Origin: Chrysemys picta bellii
Lineage: Eukaryota
Assembly: GCF_011386835.1 (NCBI RefSeq)
Contig: NC_088810.1
Location: 1,488,001-1,552,000 of the forward strand
DNA: 64,000 bases
Direction of reading: 5' to 3'
Below are positions 7,636 to 16,729 of this stretch, one piece after another; positions within the stretch are counted from its first letter, which is position 1; the number at the start of each line of letters is the position of its first letter. A program made the translations under genes and the position numbers. A model generated the notes under the pieces. The model ran no database searches and was not told where the DNA came from. It saw only the letters and a list, made by a program, of their open reading frames with translations.

Positions 7636-7849
7636 GCAGGTCGCCCGTTATTCTGACAAGTGCGGGACACAGGAAAAAACCATGCAATGCCACAGCTATA
7701 TAACCACACTCCGCTAATGCAGCAGCAACCCCTGTGTCACAGCCGCCCTGGCTGGAATTCAGCACCACATACACAGCCCCCGAGCCCGCCTCAGAGGGGG
7801 CTGCATCTCCGCGCTGGGGGAGGAAACACTCTACAAACAGCCCCTCCCC

Positions 7850-10567
7850 CTACTCCTTGGCATGGGCTTGGTGCAGCATCCGCTCTGCGTCCTCCGTCAT
7901 CTCTGCCAGGGCCTGTGTCAGCAGCCTGTAGGTGGCCTCCAGGGAGATCTCAGGCTGCCCCTCGGCCCCGCGGCCCCAGTAGGGCACAAAGTTCCACATT
8001 CGGGAGGAGAAGGGCGCTGGCTTAGTGATCTGCTTCAGCACCTGCTCCGGGTCCAGCCGCTTGACCCAGGGGCTCCGGATCTCGGCCTGGAGCAGCCCGG
8101 CCGGCTTCCCTGTGGCTTTGGCCACCTGGGCCAAGGACTCCTCGTCCAGGCCCAGCTCGATGGAGAAAGCCGAGATTGTGTCGACGAGGCTGGTGGCCAC
8201 ATCCGGGCCAGGTTTCTCTGCGTAGTACAGGCAGGTATTCAGGGTCTTGCCCCAGACGTCCTTCATCAGCGCCTTGCTCTTCCTCCTCACCAGGCGGCTC
8301 AAGGCCACGGGGATGGCCTTCTCCAGTGCCTCCCTCTTCAAGGCTGGGGCATCGCTCTCCAGGGCCGCCCGGAGGGCCGGCAGGTCGTAGGCCTCGCGGA
8401 GAAGGCTGGAGACGAGGAAGACCCTGGGGGAGCCCACGCCGTCCTTCTGGAGGGCATCCACACAGCTGCTCCGGATCTCCTCCAAGGGGCCGGGCTCGGG
8501 GCCGGGCTCAGAGCCGGGCTGGGCGTCCACATCCACCTTGGTCCTGATGAAGAAGAACCGCTTCCCGGCCGCGCTGATGGCCCGGGCGAGCTGGCTCTGG
8601 GCGTGGCGGTAGCGCTCCGAGGCCGTCAGCAGGAAGAAGTCGTAACGGGACAGATCCAGCCGCCCCACGTCCTCCTCCGTTACCCCCACTCCCGGCAAGT
8701 CCCACAGATACAGGCCAGGCACGGTGGGGTGGGCGTAAGCTGTGGCTTTCCGGGTGGTGGCCATCACCCCCGTGGGTGCTGCCTCTGGCTCCCCGCAGCC
8801 CACCCCCCTCAGAGCGTTCACCAGCGCCGACTTGCCCGAGCCAGCCTCCCCCAGCACTGCCACGTCCAGCCGGATCTGCGAGGGCTCCTCCAGCGCCGAG
8901 CGGATGATGGCAGGCACCCCTGCCAGTCCCCCCGTGGCACAGGCCTGGTACAGCTCTTGGGTCTTCCTCGTGTTCACAGCCCTCAGGTCGTCCAGCTCCC
9001 CGTCCTGGGCCCTGCACAGAGAGGACGGGACGGGGGGATTGGAGCCCCTCTGCTGAGCTTTGGGTAGAGAGGAAGCTTGTACCTGGTGTCACTGGAACCC
9101 AGGACACTTGGGGTCTGGTCCCAGCTCAGCCACAGACACCCTGTGAGTCACTGCCTCTCTCTGGGCCTCAGTTTCCCCACCTGTATGTAGGAGAAGGAGC
9201 CTTCTTTTGTCTATGCAGAATGGAAGCTCCACCTCTTAGAGGATGTGGGGCAGGGACTGGGGCTTGGGCGGGGTCTATGCAGCGCCCCATAGCGGAGCCC
9301 CTGTTCTCGAGCGGGGTCTATGCAGCGCCCGGCACAATGCAGCACTTAGTGTGATGGGGCCCCGCAATACCCAGTGGGGAAGTTTCACTGCAGTTTCTGT
9401 TAAAAAGCTGATTTTTCAAAGTGCTGTAAAATTTCCCCCACTCCCCTCCCAGAGCCAGAACCCAGGAGTCCTGGCTCCCGGCCCACCTGCTCTGACCCAC
9501 TAGACCCCACTCCCCTCCCAGAGCTGGGGAGAGAACCCAGGAGTCCTGGCTCCCGGCCCCCCTGCTCTGACCCGCTAGACCCCACTCCCCTCCCAAAGCT
9601 GGGGAGAGAACCCGGGAGTCCTGGCTCCCGGCCCCCCTGCTCTGACCCGCTAGACCCCACTCCCCTCCCAGAGCTGGGGAGAGAACCCGGGAGTCCTGGC
9701 TCCTGGCCCCCCCTGCTCTGACCTGCTAGACCCCACTCCGCTCCCAGAGCTGGGGAGAGAACCCAGGAGTCCTGGCTCCCGGCCCCCCTGCTCTGACCCG
9801 CTAGACCCCACTCCCCTCCCAGAGCTGGGGAGAGAACCCAGGAGTCCTGGCTCCTAGCCCCGCTCCACTCACCTCTTCAGCTGGATTAGCTCCTCCTCCA
9901 GTTTGTCCTGGAACTGGCTGAACTGGTACCTGTCCGTCTCCAGGGCCGAGACCAGGAAAACCCTGTTGGGCTCCAGCCTGTTCTTGGCCAGCACCTCGGC
10001 CACCCCGTTCCGGGCCAGCGCCAGCGCCTCGGCCGAGCTGTACCGGGCCTGGAACCGCCGCTTGGCCGTGTGCAAGTCCAGGTCCACCTTGGTGCGCACC
10101 ACGTAGTAGGGCTTCCGCTTCTGCTGGAAGGCCTTGAGGAGCTGCAGGTGGGGATCTGCCGGGCTTCCCTCGGCCACCACCAGCACCAGGCAGGTGAACT
10201 TCCCCAGGTCCCCCAGCCGCTTCGTGTAGTCGCCCGGCTTCTCCGGCTCCTGGAAGCCCGGGAGATCCCACAGTGCCAGGTTGGGGTAGGTGGGGTGGGT
10301 GTAGCCGGCCGGCTGCCCCGGGGGTTCCGGCGCCTGCTGGAAGAAGGCCTGGGCGTTGTCCAGGCCGGGGCGTTCTCCCACGAGGGCGTGGATCAGCGTG
10401 GTGACCCCGGCGGCCCGGCGGCCCACCACAGCCACGTCGACCTTCAGGGTGTTGACCGAATCCACCAGGGCCTGGAGGCGGGCGGCGGCCGTGACGGGGT
10501 CGTGGGCTTCGTAGCGGGTCCGCAGCTCCCGGAGGAAAGCGTCATCCAAGCCCACCGGGGCTGCCAT
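7850..10567 (-). CDS. Tandem double-domain immunity-related GTPase (IRGQ/IRGC family), 618 aa; coding exons 10567-9873 and 9011-7850
   Basis: GCCATGG start after an acceptor at 10578/7. The donor AG|GTGAGT (9872) and acceptor TGCAG|G (9013/2) join in phase 2 (Arg); 695+1162 = 1857 nt. Domain 1 motifs: GRRAAGVT, LWDLPG, TKVD. Domain 2 motifs: GEAGSGKS, TGVMATT, LWDLPG, TKVD. AATAAA on - at 7507-7512. Confidence 0.88.
9110..9190 (+). mobile_element. CORE-SINE (MIR-like) fragment
   Basis: The segment ctctctgggcctcagtttccccacctgta is the CORE-SINE hallmark. Similar cores occur near 29950, 35140, 42395, 46040 and 49655. Confidence 0.6.
9440..9860 (-). repeat. Array of ~74-bp tRNA/SINE-head-like repeat in the IRG intron
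   Basis: About 5-6 units of ggagccaggactcctgggttctctccccagctctgggaggggagtggggtctag...gagcag on the - strand. Confidence 0.9.
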
Positions 10568-10981
10568 GGCCCACCGCTGCGAGGGGAAGAAAGCTGGAGT
10601 CAGGACTCCTGGGTTCTCTCCCCGGCTCGGGGAGGGGAGTGTGGGCTGGTGGTTAGAGACGGGGCCAGGACGCCTGGGTTCTCTGGGGGAGACGGGGGGT
10701 CAGGACGCCTGGGTTCTCAGGGGAAGGGGGGAGACAGGACCCCTGGGTTCTGGGGGGGTGATGGTGGTTGGGGGGGGACCAGGACGCCTGGGTTCTTGGG
10801 GGGGGGGGGGGGCTGGGAGCCAGGACGCCTGGGTTCTCTGGGGGAGACGGGGGGGTCAGGACGCCTGGGTTCTCAGGGGAAGGGGGGAGACAGGACCCCT
10901 GGGTTCTGGGGGGGTGATGGTGGTTGAGGGGGGGGACACCAGGACGCCTGGGTTCTCGGGGGGGGGGGTCCAGCCGCTCAC

Positions 10982-11126
10982 CCGCAGTGGGTCCCTCCCG
11001 GCCGATGGCTCCAGGCCCAGTGACAGCGGGGCCGGGAAATAGAAACCGACGCGGCGGCTCCTCCCCGCGGGGGCCGGGCCGGGCCGGGCCGGAGGGGGAG
11101 GAACCGGGAGAGACGCCGGCGGAGCC
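10982..11126. promoter_or_regulatory. Bidirectional GC/CpG-rich promoter and first exons of the two IRG genes, with an ISRE at 11034-11047
   Basis: Outward-facing donors: GTGAGC on - (10981) and GTGAGT on + (11127). GGGAAATAGAAACC fits the ISRE/IRF consensus GAAANNGAAAC. Confidence 0.75.
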
Positions 11127-11149
11127 GTGAGTGCGGGAGGGAGCGATCG

Positions 11150-11900
11150 TGTGACCCCCCCCCGGCCCCCTGCAGCCCCCGATCCGCCCCCCCTCCCTTG
11201 CACCCCCATCCTCCCCCCGAGCCGCCCCGTGCACCTCCGATCTGCCCCCTGCAGGCCCCGATCTGCCCCCCGCTCCCCGTGCACCCCCGCCCCATCCCCT
11301 GCACCCCCCATCCTCCCCCCGAGCTGCCCCCTGCACCCCCCGTCTGTCCCCTGCCCCATGCACCCCCGATCCGCCCCCTGCATCCCCTGATCCCTCCCCT
11401 GCACCCCCTCTGGCCACCCCCTTCACCCCCCTCCCCATGCACTCCCTGATCCATCCCCTGCACCCTCCTCCGTCCCCTGCACCCCCTCTGTGCGCCCCCA
11501 TCATCCCCCTCCCCATGCACCCCCGCCCCATCCCCTGCCCTATGCACCCCCCATCCTCCCCCCGCCCCGTGCACCTCCGATCCACCCCCTGCATCCCCTC
11601 TGTCTGCCCACTTCACCCCCTTCCCGTCCCCTGCACCCCCTGATCCACGCCCTTCACCCCCCACCCCGCCTCCTGCACCCCTTTCCCGTCCCCTGCACCC
11701 CCAATCCACCCCATGCACCCCCCAATCTGTCCCCCTTTGCCCTCCGCCCCGCTTCCTGCGCCTCCCCATGCATTCCCCTGCACCCCCCGATCCATCCCCC
11801 TGCACCTCCCGATCCGCCCTATGCACCCCCTCCGTCCCCCTTCGCCCCCTGTCCATGACCCCTGATCCATCCCCCTGCACTCTCCTCTGTCTGTCCCCGT
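11150..11900 (+). repeat. C-rich degenerate low-complexity repeat (cccctgcacccc) in IRGQ intron 1
   Basis: Direct inspection; it explains several spurious Pro/Gly-rich ORFs. Confidence 0.85.
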
Positions 11901-12102
11901 GTACCCCCAATGTACCCCCCTCGGTTTATCTGTCCCTGTGCACATCTCTCCATCTGGTTCAGGAGGGGGCTGGGGTATTGGGATGGGCTGGGATCAGGGC
12001 GGGGTGGGGCAGGGGCAGGAGGGGGTGGGGGCAGGAGGCAGACCCCCGGAGCCACGCCCCCCCCCCGACAATCACTTCTCTTTCTGTCTCCGCAGCACCC
12101 AG

Positions 12103-14492
12103 ATGAACGAAGCCCCAGACCCCGAAATGCCCCCGCAGCCCCCGGTGGACACCTCGCCGGGCTCCCCGGACCGGGGCGACGTCTCGGTGGTGATCGTGGG
12201 GGCGCCGGGCTGCGGCAAGTCGGCCCTGCTCAACGCCGCGCGGGGCCTGGTGGAGGACGACGCCCGCGCGGCCCCGCTGGGGGCCCCGGCGAGCTCCGGG
12301 GGGCCCGTGCTGTACCCCGACCCGGCCCGGCCCAACCTGCTGCTCTGGGAGCTGCCCCTGACAGAGGGCGAGGGGCCGGAGCGCTGGCTGGCCGAGGGGG
12401 ACGTGGTGCTCCTGGCCACCGACGGGCTATTCGGTGCCAGCCATGCCCGCCTGGCCCAGGAGGCCCGCGGCGCCGGCAAGACGGTGCATTTCGCCCGCAC
12501 CAAGGCTGACCTGGACCTGCACACCCTCCGGCGGCTCCTGGGAGAGCGCTACGACCGGGCCCAGGCCCTCGACGCCCTCCGGGCCGCCTGCACCCAGTCC
12601 CTGGTGGCCCATGGCCTCGGGGAGCCCCTGCCTGTCGTCTTCCTCGTCTCCGGCCACGAGCCCCGAGAGCTGGACGGTCCCCTGCTGCGCCAGGCTCTGG
12701 TGGGAGACGTCAGGATGTACGAGAGGTGCGGCTTGTTTATTGTAGGGTCTCTCAGGTGGGCCGCTGTTGTGGGGATGCTCGGGAGAGGTAGGGCTGGTTT
12801 GTTATTGTGGGGTTTCTTAGGGAGACGAGTGTGGTTGCTGCGGGCGGAAGGGCCTCAGGTGGGGTGATATTGTAGGGTCTCTTTGGAGGGCTGCATGCAG
12901 TGTTTGTTATTGTAGGGTCTTTTGGTGGGTTCATTTTATAGGGTCTCAGGTGGTTTGTTATTGTAGGGTCTCCCAGAATCCCCAACACCCAGCCTGTCCC
13001 TCCATGTCTCACCCTCACTAGTCCCCCCCACTCCTCATCCCGTGTCTCCCCTGCTCTGCCTCTCCCTACTCCCGCCCCATACTCCCCGGTCCTTTCTTAC
13101 TCTGTTCAGTCCCCCCCAGCATCTCATGTCCCCTCTACCTCCCCCCCAGTATTCCCCATTGTCTTATGCCCCCGGTGCCATCTGGCATCTCACACTTTCT
13201 GTGCGCTCCCCCCCACCGGTGACCCCCATTGTCTCACGCCCCCGTGCCCCCTGGTGCCCCCATTGTCTCACGCCCACTGTGCCCGTAGGGTGCTGCGCCC
13301 CACGCTCTCCGGATTTGAGCAGATCAGCGAGCGGGAGGTGGCCGAGATTCAGGAGGCCTACGAGCTGGGCGGCCTGGCGGAGGTGGTGACCCGGGTCCAG
13401 TGCAGCCTGGAGACCCTGTGGAACGCCCGGCTGGATGTGGCCGTCACGGGGGAGTCAGGGGCTGGCAAGTCCACCTTCGTCAACGCCCTGCGAGGCCTGA
13501 GTGACGAGGACGAGGGGGCGGCCCAGACCGGCGTGACCGAGACCACGGCCCAGCCCACGGCCTACCCCTATCCCGGCTACCCCAACGTGACGCTGTGGGA
13601 CCTGCCGGGCATCGGGACGCCCAGCTTCCGGGCCGACCGCTACCTCGAGGCCGTGAATTTCACTCGCTACGACTTCTTCATCATCCTGGCCTCGGAGAGG
13701 TTCAAGGAGAACCACGTCCGCCTGGCCCGGGCCATCGTGGAGCAAGGCAAACGCTTCTACTTCGTGCGCGCCAAGGTAGACAACGACCTGGAGGCCACGC
13801 GGAGGAGGAAGAACCCGCCCGAGGAAGAGGAAGTGCTGGAGGAGATCAGGAGGGATTGCCGGGAACGGCTGGGTCAGGCCGGGCTGGGCGACGCCAAGGT
13901 CTTCCTCCTCAGCAGCTTCGAGATGGAGAAATACGACTTCCAGGCCTTCGAGGACACCTTGGAGCGAGAGCTGCCCGGGCACAAGCGTCACGCCTTCCTC
14001 CTCTCCCTGCCCAACCTCTCGGGGGCCATCATCGAGAAGAAGCGGCAGCTGCTCCACCAGGAGGTCTGGAAGGTGGCCTTGGTCTCCAGCCTGGTGGCCG
14101 CCGTGCCCTTGCCGGGGCTGGCCTTCACCTGCGACGTCTCCATCCTGCTGAGGAAACTGGCCGCCTACCGGCAGGATTTCGGGCTGGACGCGGCCTCCCT
14201 GGCCCGGCTGGCGGAGAGGGCCGGGAAGCCGCTGGAGGTGCTGCGGGCCGAGGTGCGCAGCGTGCTCGGGCGCAGCATCAACAAGGAGGTGGTGATCGGG
14301 CTGCTGGGGAAGGCCACCGGCGGGGGCTTGGTGGTGGTCAACTTCTTCTTCCACCGGATCCCCATCTACGGGGCGCTGGCCTCCGGGGGCATCTCCTTCC
14401 ACACCACCTACTCCATGCTCAGCCAGTGCCTGGAGGAGCTGGCGGCCGACTCCCAGCGGGTTCTCGTCAAGGCCTTCGACAGCGAGGTCTAA
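12103..14492 (+). CDS. IRGQ: IRGQ orthologue, tandem double-domain IRG, 608 aa; coding exons 12103-12725 and 13289-14492
   Basis: Acceptor CGCAG at 12094/5. The donor AG|GTGCGG (12726) and acceptor CGTAG|G (13287/8) join in phase 2 (Arg); 623+1204 = 1827 nt. RGDVSVVIVGAPGCGKSALL resembles recalled human IRGQ QGDVTALFLGPPGLGKSALI, and GFEQISEREVAEIQEAYELGGL resembles GFEVLGAAELEAVREAFETGGL. Domain 2 has GESGAGKS, TGVTETT, DLPG and AKVD. Syntenic with ZNF576 and PINLYP-like genes. Confidence 0.85.
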
Positions 14493-14785
14493 GGGGGCTT
14501 CCAGCCAAGCTTGGGGATCCCCTCCCGCAGCTAAGGCAGAACGGCCGTGTTCTTGTAGGGTCTCTCAGGCGGGCTGGGGGCCGCGTGCATTGCTTGGTTA
14601 TTGTAGGGTCTCCTGAAAGGGGCCTCCACGCCCAGTCCTCTCCCGAAATCTCTGGTCCCTCCCCCCCGCCCTGTATTCCCATAGCTACTCTCTCAGCACA
14701 GCCACCCTTATAGTGACCCCCCCGCTGGGTCAATCGGCCGAAGCGCCACTGTAGTCAATGGGGCCAGTTCCCCAGCTGGCCCTGA

Positions 14786-16370
14786 TGCCCCAGGGCGGCG
14801 CTAGGGGGCGCTGTGCCGCAGGGAGCGGGGTGGGGGCTCTCCCCCGGTGCCCCAGGGCGGCGCTAGGGGGCGCTGTGCCGCAGGGAGGGGGGTGGGGGCT
14901 CTCCCCCGGTGCCCCAGGGCGGCGCTAGGGGGCGCTGTGCCGCAGGGAGCGGGGTGGGAGCTCTCCCCCGGTGCCCCAGGGCGGCGCTAGGGGGCGCTGT
15001 GCCGCAGGGCGCGGGGTGGGGGCTCTCCCCCGGTGCCCCAGGGCGGCGCTAGGGGGCGCTGTGCCGCAGGGAGCGGGGTGGGGGCTCTCCCCCGGTGCCC
15101 CAGGGCGGCGCTAGGGGGCGCTGTGCCGCAGGGAGGGGGGTGGGGGCTCTCCCCCGGTGCCCCAGGGCGGCGCTAGGGGGCGCTGTGCCGCAGGGCGCGG
15201 GGTGGGGGCTCTCCCCCGGTGCCCCAGGGCGGCGCTAGGGGGCGCTGTGCCGCAGGGAGGGGGGTGGGGGCTCTCCCCCGGTGCCCCAGGGCGGCGCTAG
15301 GGGGCGCTGTGCCGCAGGGCGCGGGGTGGGGGCTCTCCCCCGGTGCCCCAGGGCGGCGCTAGGGGGCGCTGTGCCGCAGGGAGGGGGGTGGGGGCTCTCC
15401 CCCGGTGCCCCAGGGCGGCGCTAGGGGGCGCTGTGCCGCAGGGAGGGGGGTGGGGGCTCTCCCCCGGTGCCCCAGGGCGGCGCTAGGGGGCGCTGTGCCG
15501 CAGGGAGCGGGGTGGGGGCTCTCCCCCGGTGCCCCAGGGCGGCGCTAGGGGGCGCTGTGCCGCAGGGCGCGGGGTGGGGGCTCTCCCCCGGTGCCCCAGG
15601 GCGGCGCTAGGGGGCGCTGTGCCGCAGGGCGCGGGGTGGGGGCTCTCCCCCGGTGCCCCAGGGCGGCGCTAGGGGGCGCTGTGCCGCAGGGAGCGGGGTG
15701 GGGGCTCTCCCCCGGTGCCCCAGGGCGGCGCTAGGGGGCGCTGTGCCGCAGGGCGCGGGGTGGGGGCTCTCCCCCGGTGCCCCAGGGCGGCGCTAGGGGG
15801 CGCTGTGCCGCAGGGCGCGGGGTGGGGGCTCTCCCCCGGTGCCCCAGGGCGGCGCTAGGGGGCGCTGTGCCGCAGGGAGGGGGGTGGGGGCTCTCCCCCG
15901 GTGCCCCAGGGCGGCGCTAGGGGGCGCTGTGCCGCAGGGCGCGGGGTGGGGGCTCTCCCCCGGTGCCCCAGGGCGGCGCTAGGGGGCGCTGTGCCGCAGG
16001 GAGGGGGGTGGGGGCTCTCCCCCGGTGCCCCAGGGCGGCGCTAGGGGGCGCTGTGCCGCAGGGAGGGGGGTGGGGGCTCTCCCCCGGTGCCCCAGGGCGG
16101 CGCTAGGGGGCGCTGTGCCGCAGGGAGCGGGGTGGGGGCTCTCCCCCGGTGCCCCAGGGCGGCGCTAGGGGGCGCTGTGCCGCAGGGAGCGGGGTGGGGG
16201 CTCTCCCCCGGTGCCCCAGGGCGGCGCTAGGGGGCGCTGTGCCGCAGGGAGCGGGGTGGGGGCTCTCCCCCGGTGCCCCAGGGCGGCGCTAGGGGGCGCT
16301 GTGCCGCAGGGAGCGGGGTGGGGGCTCTCCCCCGGTGCCCCAGGGCGGCGCTAGGGGGCGCTGTGCTGCA
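14786..16370 (+). repeat. 26 x 62-bp near-identical GC/CpG-rich tandem array with a CTCF motif in each unit
   Basis: Unit ccccagggcgGCGCTAGGGGGCGCtgtgccgcagggagcggggtgggggctctcccccggtg. First and last units start at 14788 and 16338 (1550/62 = 25 intervals). The core matches CTCF 13/14. Confidence 0.95.
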
Positions 16371-16729
16371 GGCAGTGGAGTGGGGGGCGATTCTCCTTGC
16401 AGTTCTCCCCCCACAGCCCCCGAAATCCCCGAGGTTGCTAACACAGACCCCGTCCCTGCCCTGCCCCACGGCGGCTCCGGCTCACGCAGGGATCTTGGCG
16501 TGACGCAGGCCCAAGGACAAGGCCTCTCCTGGTCCGCGGGTGGGTCTGACCTGGCTTGTGGGGCTTGGGTCCAGTCCTGTTCCCTGGCTTTTGGGGGGCA
16601 CTGGGGCAGCACTGAAATGCGGGGGGGGTTGTTCTACAGGGGGTCCCTGACGGTCCTCGAAAGGGGCAACGTGTGTGTGTGTGTGTGGGGGGGGGGGGTC
16701 CTTCCACTGCTCTGCTAAGAACGCCCGTA

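What the first reader, a model, noticed from the sequence alone, without database searches (positions are those of the whole stretch)
10982..11126. Single ISRE at the centre of a compact bidirectional promoter
GGGAAATAGAAACC (11034-47) sits between two outward-facing splice donors (10981 on -, 11127 on +) in the only non-repetitive CpG-rich patch between the genes. One IRF/ISGF3 site could drive both IRGs. Mammalian IRGQ is generally described as not interferon-induced.
Basis: partly seen in the sequence, partly recalled or inferred. Interest (0 to 1): 0.72.

Follow-up and report, generated by a model that had tools for sequence, protein, structure and literature searches.

The report
Conserved interferon element between paired turtle IRG genes
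Two head-to-head immunity-GTPase genes of the painted turtle share a 145-base CpG-rich start region holding one interferon-response element, which has been kept since turtles and lizards split; this is a sound but familiar kind of gene control, and induction by interferon is untested.

Summary
GGGAAATAGAAACC lies at 11034-11047 and is the only ISRE core in the 64-kb window. It sits in a 145-bp non-repetitive, CpG-rich patch between two outward splice donors (10981 on the minus strand, 11127 on the plus strand).

Both donors are real. An RNA contig from another turtle uses the minus one. NCBI gene models of three turtles use the plus one.

The element is ancient. A strict core occurs once per locus, always in this patch, in five turtles (both suborders) and in the lizard Elgaria. 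Carettochelys has a 1-nt spacer deletion. The element has decayed in a gecko and in one other squamate. A neighbouring 15-nt block (11052-11066) is conserved even better.

No start site is mapped. A squamate RNA contig joins both spliced mRNAs through the patch, and the Chrysemys model starts at 11005. So the two first exons probably overlap, and the ISRE is probably transcribed rather than lying in a spacer between start sites.

Interferon inducibility could not be tested, and I found no paper on it. Human TAP1/LMP2 and BST2/BISPR are known analogues.

The scan noted a similar shared ISRE at IFI35 and its neighbour elsewhere in this genome.

Verdict: new member of a known kind, moderate interest.

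The parts
11034..11047 (+). ISRE-type element GGGAAATAGAAACC (consensus RNGAAANNGAAACT; the last base is C here and T in Emydura)
   Evidence: It is conserved at the same place in Malaclemys, Mauremys, Chelonia, Emydura and Elgaria.
11052..11066 (.). Invariant block CGGCGGCTCCTCCCC, the best-conserved stretch of the patch. Its binding factor or role is unknown; it may be a basal GC/CT-box element or lie in the start-site zone.
   Evidence: It is 100% identical in six turtles. GGCGGCTCCTCC is also present in Elgaria and Eublepharis, and GGCAGCTCCTCC in the squamate RNA contig L009.
10982..11126 (.). Shared 145-bp CpG-rich, TATA-less patch holding the non-coding first exons of both genes, with their promoter in or around it
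   Evidence: CpG o/e 0.86, no tandem repeat, and exon-1 junctions on both sides.
10977..10981 (-). Splice donor GTGAG of the minus-gene exon 1
   Evidence: RNA contig L003 from another turtle reads ...CCCACAGCGG|CTGTGGCC ATG. This joins the homologue of exon 1 to exon 2. The donor is conserved in all six turtles.
11127..11132 (+). Splice donor GTGAGT of the plus-gene exon 1
   Evidence: NCBI models P0134 (Chrysemys), P0125 (Natator) and P0124 (Emydura) read in frame from this exon into exon 2. The donor is conserved in the alignment.
10577..10981 (-). Intron 1 of the minus gene, made of CAGGACGCCTGGGTTCTC-type tandem repeats
   Evidence: The acceptor is ...cccctcgcag|CGGTGGGCC ATG.
11127..12095 (+). 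Intron 1 of the plus gene, made of C-rich tandem repeats
   Evidence: The acceptor is ...tctccgcag|CACCCAG ATG.
9875..10576 (-). Minus-gene exon 2 (start codon at 10567; degenerate N-terminal IIGP half-domain). The end near 9875 is approximate.
   Evidence: Pfam IIGP, E = 1.5e-26. P0140 residues 1-232 map here.
7850..9015 (-). Minus-gene exon 3 (full IIGP domain; the stop codon is included). The start near 9015 is approximate.
   Evidence: Pfam IIGP, E = 3.5e-66. P0140 residues 230-618 map here.
12096..12729 (+). Plus-gene exon 2 (conserved start codon at 12103; degenerate N-terminal IIGP half-domain). The end is approximate.
13287..14492 (+). Plus-gene exon 3 (full IIGP domain; the stop codon is included). 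The start is approximate.
   Evidence: Pfam IIGP, E = 1.2e-100. P0134 residues 251-651 map at 100% identity.

Best explanation
The window is Chrysemys picta bellii chromosome record CM062337.1, bases 1488001-1552000. It holds two three-exon, two-domain IIGP-family GTPase genes arranged head to head. Their non-coding first exons lie in one 145-bp CpG-rich, TATA-less patch. That patch acts as a shared, bidirectionally transcribed promoter and first-exon region.

The patch carries two conserved elements. One is an ISRE at 11034-11047. The other is an invariant GC/CT block 5 nt downstream. I infer that the GC/CT block and the CpG-island character give basal expression. I also infer that, after interferon signalling, ISGF3 (STAT1/STAT2/IRF9) or IRF1 binds the ISRE and raises initiation in both directions.

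Shown here: the motif, its uniqueness, its conservation since the turtle-lizard split, both exon-1 splice junctions, and the CpG patch.

Inferred: factor binding, inducibility, and co-regulation of both genes. The first exons most probably overlap, so the ISRE sits at or just inside the transcribed 5' ends rather than in a spacer between them.
For: The motif is present and unique. A chance occurrence in the patch has a probability of about 1e-4.

The strict core GAAANNGAAAC occurs exactly once in each 14-22 kb locus of Malaclemys, Chelonia, Mauremys, Emydura and Elgaria, and always in the homologous inter-donor patch. The flanks are only about 75% identical between Chrysemys and Emydura. They cannot be aligned with lizards except for the ISRE and the GC block.

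In sliding windows, the ISRE is the second conservation peak of the patch.

The minus exon1-exon2 junction is present in a turtle RNA contig. The plus junction is used in three NCBI models.

Both genes are IIGP-family, and the head-to-head pair is conserved in turtles and squamates.

Fourteen small runs from four studies hold 0.48-0.58 of the words of 7800-14600. By my arithmetic from the exon maps, the exons of both genes make up about 0.59 of that stretch. This suggests both genes are expressed.

Mouse Irg genes carry ISRE and GAS elements at promoters in front of 5' untranslated exons (PMC1297648).
Against: The element is not universally kept. Carettochelys has GGGAAAC-GAAAGT, with a 1-nt spacer. 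The gecko Eublepharis has GGGAAACAAACC. The squamate RNA contig L009 has no core.

No GAS element or second ISRE accompanies it.

The neighbouring block is more strictly conserved than the ISRE, so part of the conservation may reflect something other than interferon control.

The runs that hold the exons are only guessed to be RNA, and nothing indicates interferon treatment (their descriptions are coded), so if they are RNA, expression may be largely constitutive.

I found no paper reporting induction of these genes in turtles.
Confidence: 0.6

Rival explanations
1. The element is an IRF site (IRF-E) used by IRF1, IRF2 or IRF8 for basal or blood-cell-type expression of one or both genes. It is not an interferon switch through ISGF3. 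The genes would be mostly constitutive, as mammalian IRGQ is said to be.
For: The probable RNA runs of four studies seem to hold the exons of both genes. The promoter is CpG-island-like and TATA-less. There is no GAS or second ISRE. Several squamates and Carettochelys have a weakened site while both genes stay intact.
Against: The 5' GGGAAA half and the GAAAC(C/T) 3' half fit the full ISGF3-type ISRE rather than a minimal IRF half-site repeat (the consensus is from general knowledge). IRF sites and ISREs overlap in function, so this rival is hard to separate from the main reading by sequence alone.
Confidence: 0.2
2. The conserved sequence is constrained for another reason: as part of the overlapping 5' UTR exons (an RNA-level or start-site-selection role), or as a site for an unrelated factor. 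Its likeness to an ISRE would then be incidental.
For: The patch is transcribed. The ISRE lies inside the Chrysemys model's exon 1. Its homologous position lies inside the squamate RNA contig. The adjacent non-ISRE block is conserved even more strictly.
Against: Conservation follows the two GAAA half-sites, while the two spacer bases vary (TA, CA, CC), which is the pattern expected of an IRF/ISGF3 site. The genes belong to a family whose mouse members are typically driven by ISREs. A chance ISRE in this G+C-rich patch is very unlikely.
Confidence: 0.12
3. The ISRE serves only one of the two genes. The other is driven from its own start site and merely overlaps.
For: The element is off-centre: 52 nt from the minus donor and 79 nt from the plus donor. 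The Natator model extends plus exon 1 at least 237 nt upstream, through the minus donor. That suggests separate, overlapping promoters.
Against: The whole patch is only 145 bp, so a bound activator lies within about 100 bp of any start site in it. Shared elements act in both directions in the known compact bidirectional interferon promoters (PMC2191963, PMC4311693).
Confidence: 0.08

Closest known systems
Human TAP1/LMP2 (PSMB9) shared bidirectional promoter (Wright et al. 1995, PMC2191963)
   Same: Two immune genes are transcribed divergently from one short, TATA-less, GC-rich region with multiple start sites. From general knowledge, interferon control there acts through shared IRF and STAT sites.
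   Different: That region is 593 bp and its transcripts do not overlap. Here the whole inter-donor patch is 145 bp and the first exons probably overlap. Here there is a single ISRE and no GAS. The two genes here are paralogues of one family.
Human BST2/BISPR bidirectional interferon-responsive promoter (PMC4311693)
   Same: A shared bidirectional promoter contains an ISRE. It shows STAT1/STAT2 binding and concordant induction of both transcripts.
   Different: One partner there is a non-coding RNA. Here both partners are protein-coding IRG paralogues, and binding and induction are untested.
Mouse Irg (p47 GTPase) promoters (Bekpen et al. 2005, PMC1297648)
   Same: IIGP-family genes have 5' untranslated exons, with ISRE (and GAS) motifs in the putative promoters upstream of those exons. 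The authors call the association of interferon elements with Irg genes presumably ancient.
   Different: Most transcribed mouse Irg genes on chromosomes 11 and 18 have multiple perfect ISRE and GAS motifs, and no head-to-head shared promoter is described in the passages I read. The turtle genes are two-domain, IRGQ-like proteins with one ISRE and no GAS.
Human IFITM1 (9-27) ISRE
   Same: From memory only, its core GGAAATAGAAAC(T) is identical to the painted-turtle core over 12 nt.
   Different: This was not checked with any tool here. It is a lead, not a test.

Membership tests
ISRE (ISGF3/IRF-binding interferon-stimulated response element) | Sequence fits RNGAAANNGAAACT | tested here: met
   GGGAAATAGAAACC fits at every position but the last, which is C where the consensus has T. 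Emydura has the full GGGAAACAGAAACT. The consensus itself is from general knowledge.
ISRE (ISGF3/IRF-binding interferon-stimulated response element) | Lies close to the start site of the regulated gene | tested here: inconclusive
   It lies in the 145-bp patch that holds both first exons. No start site is mapped, and it may lie just inside the transcripts.
ISRE (ISGF3/IRF-binding interferon-stimulated response element) | Half-sites conserved while the spacer varies | tested here: met
   This holds in five turtles and Elgaria, with spacers TA, CA and CC. It is weakened in Carettochelys, Eublepharis and the L009 species.
ISRE (ISGF3/IRF-binding interferon-stimulated response element) | Bound by ISGF3 or IRF proteins | not testable with these tools
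   Needs EMSA or ChIP.
ISRE (ISGF3/IRF-binding interferon-stimulated response element) | Confers interferon inducibility | not testable with these tools
   No reads could be laid, and no paper was found.
Bidirectional promoter | Two genes on opposite strands with 5' ends less than 1 kb apart | tested here: met
   Both first exons lie within 10982-11126. The arrangement is conserved in six turtles and in squamates.
Bidirectional promoter | Divergent, non-overlapping start sites flanking a shared core | tested here: inconclusive
   The evidence leans towards overlap. RNA contig L009 joins both spliced mRNAs. The Chrysemys model starts at 11005 while minus exon 1 reaches about 11008. The two Emydura coding-sequence starts overlap.
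Bidirectional promoter | CpG-rich and TATA-less | tested here: met
   CpG o/e 0.86, 79% G+C, no TATA or Inr match.
Bidirectional promoter | Co-expression of the two genes | tested here: inconclusive
   Both mRNAs occur in one squamate RNA run. The word shares of 14 probable RNA runs match the exon fraction of both genes. There are no quantitative data.
IRGQ orthologue (for the plus-strand gene) | Orthology to mammalian IRGQ by sequence and neighbourhood | tested here: inconclusive
   NCBI names the Anolis carolinensis relative 'immunity-related GTPase family Q protein' (P0201). The neighbours are a C2H2 zinc-finger gene and a LY6/uPAR gene; from memory, this fits human ZNF576-IRGQ-PINLYP. No mammalian protein was compared.

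The most novel reading that the evidence does not exclude
The ISRE may date from the common ancestor of turtles and lepidosaurs, and may switch on both members of a head-to-head pair of two-domain IRG GTPases from inside their overlapping first exons. One member of the pair would be the IRGQ orthologue. IRGQ would then have begun as half of an interferon-induced gene pair. Mammals, and independently some squamates, would later have lost the partner gene, the element, or both, leaving a constitutive autophagy receptor.
Probability: 0.3. Interest if true: 0.55.

Novelty: new member of a known kind. Interest (0 to 1): 0.4.

Why it matters
If confirmed, this would be a clean, very compact natural example of one interferon element serving two paralogous defence genes. 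It comes with natural variants for comparison: an intact site in most turtles and Elgaria, a 1-nt spacer deletion in Carettochelys, and decay in geckos.

It would also bear on the history of IRGQ, which is studied in mammals as an autophagy receptor. The element suggests that the reptile counterpart and its partner gene belong to the interferon response.

The principle itself, a shared ISRE promoter, is already well known.

Tried and rejected
I therefore have no read-level data on start sites, strand or expression level.

2. Exact look-ups for Chrysemys transcripts. P0134 and P0001 returned only genome records, and P0140 and P0004 were not on record.

3. Literature on induction of these genes in turtles or reptiles. 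Nothing was found.

4. GAS, NF-kB, Sp1, TATA, Inr, ETS and NRF1 motifs in the patch. None was found. One YY1-like GATGGC at 11004 is not conserved.

5. The idea that conservation reflects coding. The in-frame ATG at 11005 used by the Chrysemys model is absent in Mauremys and deleted in Chelonia. The N-terminal extension is therefore probably an annotation artefact, and I rejected this idea.

6. Chance. I rejected this on the basis and the cross-species result.

One slip: the local alignment used the unmasked window as subject inside the closed script machine. In addition, locus L002 (the same genome) was scanned whole by my local scripts. From then on I used a masked copy of the window.

Full report
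**What is at the coordinates.**
- The plus strand reads GGGAAATAGAAACC at 11034-11047.
- On the minus strand a donor GTGAG begins at 10981. On the plus strand a donor GTGAGT begins at 11127.
- The 145 bp between the donors (10982-11126) is free of tandem repeats. Both flanks are repeat arrays, at 10664-10968 and 11165-11849.
- The patch has 19 CpGs, CpG o/e 0.86 and 79% G+C. The two flanking introns have CpG o/e 0.35 and 0.46, and the whole window 0.42.
- The core GAAANNGAAAC occurs once in the 64-kb window, against 0.21 expected. No other site within one mismatch lies in 9300-14600.
- Shuffles of the patch contain the core in about 1 of 10,000 trials.

**The genes.**
- The window is Chrysemys picta bellii, record CM062337.1, bases 1488001-1552000. 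Locus L002 matches the tested stretch 10940-11170 at 100% with an offset of 1004, and the NCBI protein P0134 maps at 100%.
- The minus-strand gene has its start codon at 10567, nine bases after a good acceptor (exon 2 begins at 10576). It has two coding exons, about 10576-9875 and 9015-7850. These encode a degenerate IIGP half-domain and a full IIGP domain.
- The plus-strand gene mirrors it. Exon 2 begins at 12096, with a conserved start codon at 12103. Its coding exons are 12096-12729 and 13287-14492.
- The head-to-head pair lies between a C2H2 zinc-finger gene and a LY6/uPAR gene. The LY6/uPAR gene follows the plus gene in Malaclemys, Chrysemys, Chelonia, Emydura, Carettochelys, Elgaria and Eublepharis; no such gene was called in the Mauremys locus. 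The zinc-finger gene appears in the three loci that reach far enough: Malaclemys, Chrysemys and Emydura. In Eublepharis the two genes lie much farther apart.
- NCBI calls almost all of these genes 'interferon-inducible GTPase 5-like'. The Anolis carolinensis relative of the plus gene is named 'immunity-related GTPase family Q protein'.

**Are the donors used?**
- Yes for the minus gene. A Logan RNA contig from another turtle (L003, run SRR22107230) carries the full minus-gene coding sequence with 36 nt of 5' UTR.
- That UTR reads ...GGGACCCACAGCGG|CTGTGGCC ATG. It matches the 3' end of the Chrysemys exon 1 (GGGACCCACTGCGG) joined to exon 2, and it is identical over CCCACAGCGG to the Emydura exon-1 end.
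- It shows at least about 25 nt of exon 1, reaching the equivalent of about 11008.
- Yes for the plus gene. Three NCBI models read in frame from exon 1 across the 11126|12096 junction into exon 2: Chrysemys P0134, Natator P0125 and Emydura P0124.

**Conservation.**
- I fetched the orthologous loci of five more turtles and two lizards. The strict core occurs exactly once in each locus of Malaclemys, Chelonia mydas, Mauremys reevesii, Emydura macquarii (a side-necked turtle) and the lizard Elgaria. In each it lies in the homologous inter-donor patch.
- The sequences are:
  - GGGAAATAGAAACC in Chrysemys and Malaclemys
  - GGGAAACAGAAACC in Chelonia and Mauremys
  - GGGAAACAGAAACT in Emydura
  - GAGGAAACCGAAACC in Elgaria
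- The GAAA half-sites are fixed while the two spacer bases vary, as expected of an IRF/ISGF3 site.
- Flanking sequence is about 75% identical between Chrysemys and Emydura. Between turtles and lizards only the ISRE and a neighbouring block can be aligned.
- Exceptions:
  - Carettochelys has GGGAAAC-GAAAGT, with a 1-nt spacer.
  - The gecko Eublepharis has GGGAAACAAACC.
  - A squamate RNA contig (L009) has only a remnant.
- The element is therefore old, probably from the common ancestor of turtles and lepidosaurs, but it is dispensable in some lineages.

**A second element.** The best-conserved stretch of the patch is not the ISRE. It is CGGCGGCTCCTCCCC at 11052-11066, invariant in six turtles and recognisable in both lizards and in L009. 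I could not assign a factor to it. It may be a basal GC/CT-box element, or it may mark the start-site zone.

**Where transcription starts.** The indirect evidence points to overlapping first exons rather than diverging ones.
- First, the Chrysemys NCBI model starts at an ATG at 11005, so its exon 1 spans at least 11005-11126 and contains the ISRE. That ATG is not conserved, so the coding extension is probably an artefact, but the exon extent stands as a model.
- Second, the Natator model extends exon 1 at least 237 nt upstream of the donor. It runs through the ISRE and the minus donor into the repeat intron.
- Third, in Emydura the two models' coding starts overlap at a CATG.
- Fourth, and strongest, Logan RNA contig L009 (run SRR12656983, a squamate) contains both spliced mRNAs joined head to head. 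The coding-exon introns of Elgaria and Eublepharis are absent on both sides. The stretch between the two donors, L009 about 2201-2339, is colinear with the genomic patch of those lizards. A 31-mer assembly can make such a join only if reads bridge the two 5' ends, so the transcripts overlap by about 30 nt or more.
- The remnant of the ISRE lies inside this transcribed segment.
- In the turtle, minus exon 1 reaches at least about 11008. The ISRE is therefore at most 26 nt upstream of the minus start site, or downstream of it.

**Expression.** Fourteen small runs from four studies, guessed to be RNA, hold 0.48-0.58 of the sampled words of 7800-14600. By my arithmetic, the exons of both genes make up about 0.59 of that stretch. 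This fits expression of both genes in ordinary samples, but it is an inference: I could not see which words were held. I found no paper on induction of these genes in turtles or other reptiles.

**Most likely mechanism.** The patch is a CpG-island-like, TATA-less, bidirectionally transcribed promoter and first-exon region shared by the two paralogues.
- Basal activity probably comes from its GC-rich elements.
- The ISRE probably lets ISGF3 or IRF1 raise transcription in both directions after interferon signalling.
- What is shown and what is inferred is set out under the best explanation, with my confidence (0.6); the rivals and their weights are listed with it.

**Comparison with what is known.**
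- Compact bidirectional interferon-responsive promoters are established. Human TAP1/LMP2 is 593 bp, TATA-less and GC-rich, with multiple non-overlapping start sites (PMC2191963). Human BST2/BISPR has a shared ISRE with STAT1/STAT2 binding (PMC4311693).
- Mouse Irg genes have ISRE and GAS motifs in the putative promoters upstream of their 5' untranslated exons. Bekpen et al. already called this association presumably ancient (PMC1297648).
- The turtle case differs in four ways: its extreme compactness, the probable overlap of the first exons, the single site without GAS, and the fact that both partners are two-domain IRGQ-like paralogues.
- It is a new member of a known kind.
- The scan's notes record a similar shared ISRE at IFI35 and its neighbour elsewhere in this genome. 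I did not test that note.

I sent nothing from 9143-9188 to any database search tool. From then on I used a masked copy of the window.

Noticed in passing
window 11052-11066: The 15-nt block CGGCGGCTCCTCCCC, 5 nt downstream of the ISRE, is invariant in six turtles and recognisable in two lizards and a squamate RNA contig. It is conserved better than the ISRE, and I could assign no factor to it.
   Followed up: partly
window 11005-11126: The NCBI model XP_065430026.1 (651 aa) starts at an in-frame ATG at 11005 in exon 1 and so 'translates' the ISRE as GNRN. That ATG is absent in Mauremys and deleted in Chelonia. The 43-residue N-terminal extension is therefore probably an annotation artefact, and the conserved start is at 12103.
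   Followed up: partly
L006 5979-6003 (Emydura): The Emydura orthologue of the minus gene seems to lack the canonical start codon: its model reads Leu where the other species have Met. Its NCBI model begins at a CATG in the shared patch, which also starts the plus-gene model, and then uses a splice with no obvious GT donor.
   Followed up: no
L009 1-4232 (Logan RNA contig SRR12656983_32755): A single assembled RNA contig holds both spliced mRNAs head to head. The automatic 643-aa product of its minus gene starts at a TTG and over-extends the true protein by 28 residues.
   Followed up: yes
window 14786-16386: A very homogeneous 62-bp tandem array (25.8 copies, 98% matches) lies just downstream of the plus gene, and Malaclemys has one too.
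   Followed up: no
window 10664-10968 and 9500-9861: Both introns of the minus gene are built from tandem repeats. In intron 1 the unit is CAGGACGCCTGGGTTCTC-like. The intron 2 array has a 75-bp unit and related copies at many other places in the window and in other turtles. The repeat in intron 1 differs in copy number between species, while the exon-1 patch stays fixed.
   Followed up: no
L010 846-7978 (Eublepharis): In the gecko, the second exons of the two genes lie about 7 kb apart instead of about 1.5 kb. The conserved patch, with its decayed ISRE, sits near L010 2860-2960, about 2 kb from the minus-gene exon and 5 kb from the plus-gene exon.
   Followed up: partly
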